A DNA stretch of 56,539 nucleotides, the filler included, from Sluysia triapertura (Eukaryota): assembly GCA_046118255.1 (NCBI GenBank). It is 5 parts of 5 records of this genome, joined end to end, with 100 filler letters (N's around TTAATTAATTAA, not from the genome) between each part and the next. Parts side by side here need not be neighbours in the genome. Positions count along the whole stretch, not along the records: positions 11,257 to 22,422 come from JBJNIA010188022.1; 4 more parts are not named here. The stretch is one strand, 5' to 3'. Under the pieces are notes generated by a model. The model saw nothing but the letters and a program-made list of their open reading frames with translations, did no database searches and was not told the origin of the DNA. Each line of letters opens with the position of its first letter. Positions within the stretch are counted from its first letter, which is position 1. Made by a program: the position numbers and the translations under genes. Shown piece after piece: positions 11,257-12,925 of the stretch.

Positions 11257-11434
11257 AAGGGAATTTAAGAATCGATGATATTTTGTTGTGCCATGAGTGA
11301 TAATTATTTCGAGAATGAGAACTGCAAACGTGAGTTGGATTATGCATTAAAATACAAACAGAAAGACGATCTTGTAATAGTAAAAGTGAGAAAAATTGTA
11401 ACATAAAAAACAATATGATACTAACATAAGAAAT
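11257..11434 (+). pseudogene. Additional partial TIR repeat with a nonsense codon and a frameshift
   Basis: Reads KGI*ESMIFCCAMSDNYFENENCKRELDYALKYKQKDDLVIVKV, nearly identical to the downstream repeats. Confidence 0.85.
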
Positions 11435-12925
11435 TTGAATGATTTGAAGAGAATATCACTTTACAAAAAAGTGAATGATACTCTTATTACTTATTTGAAA
11501 CACCACATGGTACGTTTTTTAAAAAGTAAAGAAGACAATGAAAGAAGTATTTCAGAAAGTAAACGAAGTGGTAATAAAAAATGTAAATACGACATTTATC
11601 TGAGTTATTGTGACAAAGATTGGAATATGGCGGAAAAGATTTATGATGAATTGTGTAATAATGGATTTAGTGTGTGCATTGATAAAAAGTGTACGACTAA
11701 TGAAGATGAACTTATCGTAATGATAAATGAAATTGATGAATCGATGATATTTTGTTGTGCTTTAAGTGATAATTATTTCGAGAATGATAAATGTTATCGT
11801 GCGTTGAATTATGCATTAAAATGCAAAAAGAAAGGCGATATTGTAATAGTAAAAGTGGGAGAAATTGTAAAATATAAAGCAGTATGTAATACACGATTTA
11901 GAAATATGAAATCTTTGAAGATAATGCCACTTGACAAATGGAATGAGTATTTTATTATTTATTTGAAATACTGTATGGTACGAGTTTTAAAAAGGAAAGA
12001 TGGCGATACAAAAAGAATTTCAGAAAGGGAGCAATATATAAAATATAAGTACGACATTTATTTGAGTTATTGTGACAGAGATTGGAATATGGTGGAAAAG
12101 ATTTATGATGAGTTGTGTAATAATGGGTTTAAAGTGTGGATTGTTAATAAGTTTATCTATACTGGAGATGTTTTCGACTTAATCAGAAAGGGAATTGAAG
12201 AATCGATGATATTTTGTTGTGCCATGAGTGATAATTATCTCTCGAATTGGAACTGTAAACATGAGTTTTATAATGCCTTCACAAACAAAAAGACAGACGA
12301 TATTGTAATATTAAATGTTGGAAAAATTGTATATAATATAGAAGAATATAATAGTAATATTGTCAGCTGGCGTGCTTTGAAAAGAATATCACTTGCCGAA
12401 GTATATGAGACTATTATTACTTATTTGAAACACTATATGGTACGATTTTTAAAAAGGAAAGACGATGAAAGAAGTATTTCAGAAAGTGAACTAATAATAT
12501 ATATAAATACTAATAAGAAATATAAATACGACATTTATCTGAGTTGTTGTGGCAAAGATTGGAATATTGTGGAAGATATTTATGATGAATTGCGTGATAA
12601 TGGATTTAGTGTGTGCATTGCTGGAGATGATGTAGACTTAATGAGAAAAGGAATTGATGAATCGATGATATTTTGTTGTGCCATGACTGATAATTATTTC
12701 GATAGGGAGTACTGTGTTCGTGAGTTGGATTATGCATTAAAATACAAAAAGAAAGACGATCTTGTAATAGTAAAAGTGGGAGACATTGTAAAATATAAAA
12801 GAGAATGTGATACTAAAATTGGAAATATGAATTATTTGAAGATAATGTCACTTGATAAAGTGGACGAAGCACTTAATAAATTATCTTCCATGTTAAATGA
12901 TCGTTTGAAATGTGATACAAATTAA
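11435..12925 (+). CDS. Tandem TIR-domain (TIR_2-type) protein, 3 complete repeats, intronless, 5' incomplete or disrupted
   Basis: Three ~155-aa units, each YDIYLSY..D....E.IYDEL..NGF.V.I...I.ES.IF.C..SDNYF....C..E...A. The track ORF starts at TTG. Confidence 0.92.
   Translation: MNDLKRISLYKKVNDTLITYLKHHMVRFLKSKEDNERSISESKRSGNKKCKYDIYLSYCDKDWNMAEKIYDELCNNGFSVCIDKKCTTNEDELIVMINEIDESMIFCCALSDNYFENDKCYRALNYALKCKKKGDIVIVKVGEIVKYKAVCNTRFRNMKSLKIMPLDKWNEYFIIYLKYCMVRVLKRKDGDTKRISEREQYIKYKYDIYLSYCDRDWNMVEKIYDELCNNGFKVWIVNKFIYTGDVFDLIRKGIEESMIFCCAMSDNYLSNWNCKHEFYNAFTNKKTDDIVILNVGKIVYNIEEYNSNIVSWRALKRISLAEVYETIITYLKHYMVRFLKRKDDERSISESELIIYINTNKKYKYDIYLSCCGKDWNIVEDIYDELRDNGFSVCIAGDDVDLMRKGIDESMIFCCAMTDNYFDREYCVRELDYALKYKKKDDLVIVKVGDIVKYKRECDTKIGNMNYLKIMSLDKVDEALNKLSSMLNDRLKCDTN

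What the first reader, a model, noticed from the sequence alone, without database searches (positions are those of the whole stretch)
11257..12925. Intronless poly-TIR array with mixed catalytic and Glu-to-Ala repeats
Seen: at least four tandem TIR_2-type units (~460-480 nt period) and no LRR, TM, SAM or NB domain in the visible part. The helix-C motif reads NCKRE, KCYRA, NCKHE and YCVRE, so one repeat has Ala at the Glu position. Established: that Glu is needed for NADase activity in SARM1, plant and bacterial TIRs, and activity requires TIR self-association. Inference: covalent chaining could pre-assemble an NADase or signalling scaffold with one inactive spacer unit. The repeats are still very similar at DNA level, suggesting recent expansion. 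The most upstream unit has a stop and a frameshift, so the locus may be decaying or truncated.
Basis: partly seen in the sequence, partly recalled or inferred. Interest (0 to 1): 0.75.

Follow-up and report, generated by a model that had tools for sequence, protein, structure and literature searches.

The report
Tandem three-TIR immune-type gene fragment
This is the 3' end of a gene from an AT-rich eukaryote that strings at least three intact TIR (NAD-cleaving immune-type) domains in one reading frame; similar multi-TIR proteins already exist in tunicates, rotifers, lancelets and bacteria, so it is a new member of a little-studied but known kind.

Summary
A 462-nt tandem repeat (spacings 469/462/459 nt) fills 11257-12864. 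One 496-codon open frame (11435-12925, +) encodes three complete TIR domains (Pfam TIR_2, 3.2e-39). A fourth, partial unit is cut by the contig edge and carries a TAA (11266-68) and a 2-nt deletion (11399/11400). The helix-C Glu is present in units A, C and D and is Ala (GCG, 11801-03) in unit B.

Units B-D evolved as coding DNA:
- All unit lengths are multiples of three.
- Neutral drift at the observed divergence would leave all three stop-free in only 1e-5 to 3e-4 of trials.
- Positions invariant between units are enriched in family-conserved TIR columns (p=0.005).
- Average dN/dS is about 1, which suggests fast or diversifying change outside the core.

Contigs of a public run suggest dozens of unit copies in the genome. 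No close relative exists in 1.8 billion representative proteins (best 28% identity). However, 46 of 168 hits carry three to seven tandem TIRs, and a few mix Glu and non-Glu units. The poly-TIR architecture is therefore not new.

The AlphaFold2 model gives three confident TIR cores and no confident packing between domains. It neither supports nor refutes a pre-assembled NADase. Expression, the 5' end and activity remain untested.

The parts
11257..11434 (+). Unit A: partial TIR unit (C-terminal half of a TIR plus start of linker), cut by the contig edge and broken by a nonsense codon and a 2-nt deletion
   Evidence: Aligns at 82-90% nt identity to the same part of units B-D.
11266..11268 (+). 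TAA stop in unit A where units B-D have GAT/GAA/GAT
11399..11406 (+). Site of the 2-nt deletion (between 11399 and 11400) relative to units B-D, and the resulting stop TAA at 11404-11406
   Evidence: DNA alignment. A contig of run X1 spans it without a gap (table 8).
11435..12925 (+). Stop-free frame of 496 codons plus stop, encoding three complete TIR domains and a short C-terminal helix
   Evidence: The longest stop-free run in the other 9.5 kb is 232 codons. The composition-based chance of about 500 open codons is 2e-21.
11507..11509 (+). First in-frame ATG (codon 25; context caccacATGg). This is the possible start of a 472-aa three-TIR protein if unit A is not translated
   Evidence: use as a start codon is inferred, not shown
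11444..11914 (+). Unit B (157 codons): TIR with Ala at the catalytic Glu position and Glu in place of the BB-loop Gly
11801..11803 (+). GCG (Ala) codon of unit B at the catalytic-Glu column; one base away from GAG
   Evidence: confirmed by an exact-match contig covering 11657-11866
11915..12376 (+). Unit C (154 codons): TIR with Glu retained (GAG at 12263-12265); the most divergent unit
12377..12835 (+). Unit D (153 codons): TIR with Glu retained (GAG at 12722-12724)
12836..12925 (+). Tail. It begins like a linker (LKIMSLDKV), leaves the repeat at about 12864, then runs about 20 unique codons to the TAA stop; predicted as a helix
13109..13114 (+). AATAAA 184 nt after the stop; a possible polyadenylation signal (weak evidence in AT-rich DNA)

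Best explanation
The piece holds the 3' end of a lineage-specific poly-TIR gene with no other domain in view. The host is an AT-rich eukaryote with a large genome, probably an invertebrate animal; the species is not identified. A 154-codon unit (a helical linker of about 45 residues plus a TIR_2-type domain) was duplicated in tandem within this lineage. Three units (B, C, D) remain in one open frame that ends 29 codons after the last TIR. The array continues to the contig's 5' edge, where the fourth visible unit (A) is broken. Shown: TIR identity and fold; internal duplication; coding constraint during the divergence of B-D; Glu at the catalytic column in A, C and D, and Ala in B; many further copies of the unit in the same genome. 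Inferred: the product is a cytosolic immune-type TIR protein whose Glu-bearing domains cleave NAD+ or make a cADPR-type signal once TIRs associate, as shown for other non-TLR animal TIRs, including rotifer ones. Also inferred: unit B is a non-catalytic, fold-preserving partner. If unit A is truly broken, translation would start at ATG 11507 and give a 472-aa three-TIR protein.
For: TIR_2 3.2e-39 with three stretches. The AlphaFold2 model has three cores at pLDDT about 90. Foldseek matches RUN1, RPS4, AbTir, MyD88 and Hydra TRR-2 TIRs at probability 1.00. The Glu column aligns to RPS4 'WCVREL' and is Glu in 99% of relatives. Unit lengths of 471, 462 and 459 nt are all multiples of three. The probability that all three units stay stop-free under neutral change at the observed divergence is 1e-5 to 3e-4. 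Positions invariant among B, C and D are enriched in family-conserved columns (Mann-Whitney p=0.005, Spearman rho -0.30). Units cluster together on the tree. The nearest named relatives are TIR-only multi-TIR proteins of Clavelina (3 TIRs; 588 and 520 aa) and rotifer and lancelet TIR proteins. Summed contig depth over conserved unit segments is 600-800, against about 18-20 for unique flank. GC content of the gene (0.28-0.29) equals that of its surroundings, and there is only one long ORF in 11 kb, which fits a eukaryote. Animal non-TLR TIRs with the Glu, including rotifer ones, make cADPR or deplete NAD+ in a Glu-dependent way (bioRxiv 10.64898/2026.04.20.719644).
Against: No RNA run holds the locus, so expression is unknown. 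The unit just upstream has a stop and a frameshift, so the array as a whole is at least partly damaged. dN/dS between units is 1.1-1.3, which is not below the neutral expectation of this estimator on this sequence (median 0.66-1.03). The 5' end lies beyond the contig edge. No enzymatic test was done. TIRs carrying the Glu can be inactive, as that paper reports for TLR2 and IL-1R9/10.
Confidence: 0.6

Rival explanations
1. Recently dead pseudogene. The whole array is a decaying remnant of a once-functional poly-TIR gene. Unit A shows the first lesions, and B-D are still open only because too little time has passed since inactivation.
For: TAA at 11266 and a 2-nt deletion at 11399/11400 lie directly upstream in the same array. 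dN/dS is about 1.1-1.3, within the neutral range. Unit B has lost the most conserved residue of the family. No RNA holder was found. A family with dozens of copies is expected to contain many dead members.
Against: 496 codons are open where the composition predicts a stop every 11 codons or so. All inter-unit indels are in frame. The 16-25% divergence between units was accumulated without a single stop (P 1e-5 to 3e-4 if neutral). Differences avoid fold-critical columns. Any death must therefore be very recent, and only unit A shows it. An in-frame ATG in good context at 11507 precedes TIR B.
Confidence: 0.25
2. The visible TIRs are the C-terminal effector end of a larger, conventional multidomain protein (receptor or sensor) whose other domains lie beyond the contig edge. 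The lesions in unit A would then be assembly errors at a contig end inside a repeat, or they are spliced out.
For: The piece begins inside the array, so the 5' part is unknown. Contig ends in tandem repeats are error-prone. Mollusc Tolls with tandem C-terminal TIRs exist (PMC4929906). The TAA at 11266 could not be checked in reads.
Against: A contig of run X1 spans the 2-nt deletion without a gap. The nearest named eukaryotic relatives (Clavelina, 520 and 588 aa) are TIR-only. In bacterial poly-TIR relatives the extra domains (WD40, pentapeptide, FHA) lie C-terminal to the TIRs, whereas here the frame stops 29 codons after the last TIR. A donor/acceptor pair at 11385/11450 would restore the frame across the deletion but would not remove the TAA (read from the sequence).
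Confidence: 0.12
3. A non-enzymatic scaffold or adaptor. The TIRs act only as protein-protein interaction modules, like MyD88 or TLR TIRs, and the Glu is not used catalytically.
For: Foldseek also matches MyD88, TLR1 and IL-1RAcPb TIRs. Some Glu-bearing TIRs are inactive. The Glu is dispensable in unit B.
Against: The Glu column is 99% conserved across the relatives used here, which include bacterial defence-type TIRs. PADLOC gives ThsB-like matches. Sequence matches best the plant catalytic TIR RPS4. Most tested non-TLR animal TIRs with the Glu were active.
Confidence: 0.15

Closest known systems
Clavelina lepadiformis (tunicate) TIR-only proteins CAK8680829.1 (588 aa) and CAK8679895.1 (520 aa), each with three TIR_2 domains
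   Same: Three tandem TIR_2 domains with a period of about 160 residues, no other Pfam domain, and Glu at the catalytic column. CAK8680829.1 is the best hit in 1.8 billion representatives (3.2e-17), and its alignment runs across two consecutive units.
   Different: Only 26-28% identity. All three Clavelina units keep the Glu. CAK8680829.1 has an N-terminal extension of about 100 aa. The arrays expanded independently: units here are 50-66% identical to each other.
Bacterial poly-TIR proteins, e.g. Ca. Parabeggiatoa MEK8016451.1 (6 TIRs here), a JGI 'WD40 repeat protein' (P0003: 5 TIRs by my profile, 6 TIR_2 stretches in Pfam, plus WD40) and P0007 (3 TIRs plus pentapeptide repeats and FHA)
   Same: Head-to-tail TIR_2 domains in one chain, up to seven. 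P0003 reads E-A-E-E-E at the catalytic column, the same Glu/Ala mixture as here.
   Different: Period of about 200 residues. They carry C-terminal WD40, pentapeptide or FHA modules. They are prokaryotic. Identity is 26-30%.
Catalytic single-domain TIRs with solved structures: plant RPS4 (4c6r) and RUN1 (6o0w, 7s2z), Acinetobacter AbTir (7uxu), SARM1 (7cm7)
   Same: Flavodoxin-like TIR fold, with Glu in the 'C-x-x-E-L' helix-C motif aligned to RPS4 'WCVREL'.
   Different: Those have one TIR per chain and are activated by oligomerisation driven by other domains or by filaments. Identity is 15-18% in the structural alignments.
Non-TLR animal TIRs shown to make cADPR or deplete NAD+ (rotifer, mollusc, lancelet and others; bioRxiv 10.64898/2026.04.20.719644)
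   Same: The same broad class: TIR_2-type, non-TLR, Glu retained. The nearest tree neighbour by path is a Rotaria sp. TIR.
   Different: No supported clade joins them. The tandem architecture is not discussed in the passages of that paper that I read.
Eukaryotic proteins with two tandem TIRs: mollusc Toll-2 family (PMC4929906) and Dictyostelium TirE (bioRxiv 10.64898/2026.04.30.722052)
   Same: More than one TIR in a single chain.
   Different: Those are attached to LRR-TM ectodomains or RCC1 repeats and have two units. Here there are at least three units and no other domain in view.

Membership tests
TIR domain superfamily (Pfam clan STIR; TIR_2 PF13676) | Profile match above the curated cut-off | tested here: met
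   TIR_2 134.6 bits against a cut-off of 28; TIR 101.9 against 21.3; three stretches each
TIR domain superfamily (Pfam clan STIR; TIR_2 PF13676) | Flavodoxin-like alternating beta-alpha fold | tested here: met
   The AlphaFold2 model has three beta-alpha cores with pLDDT 85-92. Foldseek gives probability 1.00 to RUN1, RPS4, AbTir, MyD88 and TRR-2 TIRs, with target TM-scores of 0.55-0.74.
Catalytic (NAD+-processing) TIRs | Glutamate on helix C at the catalytic column | tested here: met
   Met in units A (fragment), C and D; not met in unit B (Ala). The column is 99% Glu among 138 relatives.
Catalytic (NAD+-processing) TIRs | Glu-dependent NAD+ cleavage or cADPR-isomer production | not testable with these tools
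   Needs protein expression and HPLC or LC-MS
Catalytic (NAD+-processing) TIRs | Self-association that builds the active site (BB-loop-mediated contacts) | tested here: inconclusive
   pTM is 0.39 and linkers fall below pLDDT 50, so no confident inter-domain arrangement is predicted. The BB-loop Gly is kept in C and D and replaced by Glu in B.
Toll-like / IL-1 receptor family | LRR or Ig ectodomain plus transmembrane helix N-terminal to the TIR | tested here: inconclusive
   None lies within 11257-12925, but the 5' end lies beyond the contig edge
Processed or decaying pseudogene | Premature stops or frameshifts, and substitutions blind to codon position and fold | tested here: inconclusive
   Unit A has a stop and a frameshift. 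Units B-D have none, keep the frame through all indels, and conserve fold-critical columns. dN/dS is about 1.
Thoeris ThsB (bacterial anti-phage TIR) | Match to ThsB models and pairing with a ThsA effector gene | tested here: not met
   Only partial, weak ThsB matches (PADLOC, 4e-11, no stretch passing on its own). NCBIfam scores are far below the cut-offs. The setting is eukaryotic with no neighbouring gene.

The most novel reading that the evidence does not exclude
The locus belongs to a massively amplified (dozens of units), lineage-private poly-TIR family under diversifying selection. In it, catalytic and non-catalytic TIRs joined in one chain form intramolecular composite active sites. 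Such a protein would be a self-contained NAD+-processing immune effector that does not need a separate sensor or oligomerisation domain.
Probability: 0.1. Interest if true: 0.6.

Novelty: new member of a known kind. Interest (0 to 1): 0.3.

Why it matters
Recent work shows that many non-TLR animal TIRs are enzymes rather than passive adaptors. Multi-TIR chains are common in sequence databases, yet I found no paper characterising one. A compact three-TIR protein with two Glu-bearing units and one Ala unit would be a handy natural construct for asking whether linked TIRs activate each other within one chain. As a genome feature it is an ordinary example of lineage-specific expansion of an immune-type domain family. 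Its value is limited until the organism, the full gene and expression are known.

Tried and rejected
- Word-index protein search of the 496-aa frame gave one weak hit.
- The exhaustive representative search found 316 TIR relatives, none closer than 28% identity and none at or below 1e-30.
- Scans for close relatives in viral contigs and metagenome contigs found none. An exact search for the 23-nt invariant core in metagenomes also found none.
- Viral or mobile-element origin: I found no TIR copy elsewhere in the piece, no flanking repeats of note, no tRNA and no Rfam match.
- Intron rescue of unit A: a GT at 11386 and an AG at 11449 would restore the frame across the deletion, but the same sites occur in intact units and the TAA at 11266 remains. 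I rejected this as an explanation.
- dN/dS as a test of function is uninformative. Observed values of 1.1-1.3 sit at the upper end of the neutral range of the estimator on this AT-rich sequence.
- Species identification failed. The run's organism is coded. The 228-aa neighbouring ORF has no homologues and only a weak feature-based lead to P-element-like transposases of arthropods.
- The tree of TIR domains gave no supported placement.
- Two scripts gave no answer and were redone by other means.

Full report
**What is there.** The piece (11257-22422) has about 28% G+C. It holds one long open frame and otherwise only short ORFs: the longest stop-free run in the remaining 9.5 kb is 232 codons. 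No tRNA or Rfam family is present. Public run X1, which holds the stretch, comprises about 736 Mb of contigs. Together these point to a eukaryote with a large genome. The species is coded and I could not identify it.

**The repeat and the domains.** Tandem Repeats Finder reports a 462-nt period, 3.5 copies and 75% matches over 11257-12864. The repeat finder gives four copies spaced 469, 462 and 459 nt. The frame 11435-12925 (+) translates to 496 residues with three TIR domains (TIR_2 3.2e-39, TIR 4.7e-29, three stretches each) and nothing else above a Pfam cut-off. I set the unit boundaries as follows:
- A: 11257-11434, partial.
- B: 11444-11914.
- C: 11915-12376.
- D: 12377-12835.
- Tail: 12836-12922.

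Each unit consists of a helical linker of about 45 residues followed by a TIR. Protein identity is 50% for B/C and 66% for B/D. Nucleotide identity ranges from 75% to 90%.

**The lesions in unit A.** Unit A is cut by the piece's edge. It carries TAA at 11266-68, where the others have GAA or GAT. It also has a 2-nt deletion between 11399 and 11400 that leads to a stop at 11404-06.

**The catalytic position.** phmmer aligns unit D's 'YCVREL' with 'WCVREL' of the RPS4 TIR (4c6r). From my own knowledge, that Glu is RPS4's catalytic residue (E88). I built a profile from 138 relatives only and aligned the units to it. That column is the most conserved in the family (99% Glu). Units C and D have Glu and unit B has Ala. 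The unit A fragment also has Glu.
- Unit B also replaces the BB-loop Gly with Glu.
- The GCG codon (11801-03) lies inside a 210-nt contig of run X1 that matches without a difference.

**Gene or wreck?** Three results argue that B-D diverged as coding sequence.
1. Unit lengths of 471, 462 and 459 nt are all multiples of three, so every indel between units kept the frame.
2. I simulated random substitutions, weighted by composition and with a transition bias of 2, at the observed per-lineage divergence of 8-12.5%. A single unit stayed stop-free in 1-7% of trials, and all three together in 1e-5 to 3e-4.
3. Columns invariant among B, C and D are enriched in columns conserved across unrelated TIRs (mean information 1.87 against 1.45 bits; Mann-Whitney p=0.005).

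Against this, Nei-Gojobori dN/dS between units is 1.1-1.3. A neutral simulation on the same sequences gives medians of 0.66-1.03 with wide spread. The average rate ratio therefore shows no purifying selection. I read this as a conserved fold core with fast, possibly diversifying, change elsewhere. A very recent death cannot be excluded.

If unit A is really broken, the first in-frame ATG (11507, context caccacATGg) lies upstream of TIR B and would give a 472-aa protein. The repeat ends at about 12864 inside a linker-like segment. About 20 unique codons then lead to the stop, which looks like a true gene end.

**Copy number.** In run X1, exact-match contigs in the flank have k-mer depth 18-20. 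The summed depth of contigs at 90% likeness or more over the conserved unit segments is 600-800. That suggests dozens of copies of the unit in the genome. This is a rough figure, because summed contig depth is not a copy count. Exact-match contigs inside the array have depth 8.7-10.2, which may mean the array haplotype is heterozygous.

**Relatives.** The exhaustive search of 1.84 billion representatives found 316 proteins at E of 1e-3 or better, seven at 1e-10 or better and none at 1e-30 or better. The best has 28% identity. The family is thus private to a genome absent from that library. No close kin appeared in viral or metagenome contigs either.

The architecture is not rare:
- Of 168 hits, 89 have at least 2 TIR domains and 46 have at least 3, up to seven. 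A three-domain query favours multi-domain hits, so this share is inflated.
- Named examples are Clavelina lepadiformis TIR-only proteins with three TIRs, rotifer (Didymodactylos, Rotaria) and lancelet proteins, and bacterial TIR arrays fused to WD40, pentapeptide or FHA modules.
- At the catalytic column, 303 of 325 domains have Glu. Of the 46 proteins with three or more TIRs, 37 are all-Glu and 9 are not. Most of those 9 mix Glu with Gln or Ala (P0003 reads E-A-E-E-E), and two only have gaps in my alignment.
- On a domain tree, B, C and D cluster together on a long stem with no supported neighbour. The array therefore expanded within its own lineage.

**Structure.** AlphaFold2 with a 31-row alignment of three-TIR segments gave mean pLDDT 72 and pTM 0.39. 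The three beta-alpha cores score about 85-92 and the linkers fall below 50. Foldseek matches plant RUN1 and RPS4, AbTir, MyD88 and Hydra TRR-2 TIRs. Nothing in the model supports or refutes a fixed intramolecular TIR assembly.

**Mechanism.** TIR NADase activity depends on the helix-C Glu, and many non-TLR animal TIRs make cADPR or deplete NAD+ in a Glu-dependent way, rotifer ones included (bioRxiv 10.64898/2026.04.20.719644). On that basis the most likely function is a cytosolic immune-type NAD+-processing protein. Units C and D would be catalytic and unit B a structural partner. This is inference; nothing here measures activity or expression (one search found no RNA holder).

**Novelty.** Tandem TIRs in one chain are described for mollusc Tolls (PMC4929906) and Dictyostelium TirE (bioRxiv 10.64898/2026.04.30.722052), and they are frequent among the database relatives found here. 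I rate this a new member of a known but poorly studied kind, of modest interest.

Noticed in passing
window 14057-14256: Summed contig depth in run X1 jumps to about 2,900-31,000, against about 18-20 for unique flank. This is a very high-copy repeat (transposon or satellite) about 1.1 kb downstream of the TIR gene.
   Followed up: no
window 19668-20000 (-): A 110-aa ORF starts with a RING-H2-like half-finger (zf-RING_11 2e-7, above the cut-off). The last Cys pair is missing, so it is probably one exon of a RING gene or a remnant.
   Followed up: partly
window 18495-19181 (-): A 228-aa ORF sits in a GC-richer island (0.37-0.41 against about 0.28). It has no Pfam family and no homologue by word search. 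A weak feature-based lead points to P-element/THAP9-like transposase GTP-binding-domain clusters of arthropods.
   Followed up: partly
window 11269-11291, 11738-11760, 12200-12222, 12659-12681: The 23-nt stretch GAATCGATGATATTTTGTTGTGC (ESMIFCC) is identical in all four units, synonymous sites included. This could reflect gene conversion or merely the low dS. It has no exact match in metagenome contigs.
   Followed up: partly
window 11657-11866 and 12236-12487: Exact-match contigs inside the array have about half the depth (8.7-10.2) of exact-match contigs in the 3' flank (18-20). The array haplotype in the window may therefore be heterozygous (table 8).
   Followed up: no
window 12926-14056: The 3' flank of the gene also shows 2- to 10-fold excess summed depth at 90% likeness or more. 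Whole loci, not only TIR units, seem to be duplicated in this genome (table 2).
   Followed up: no
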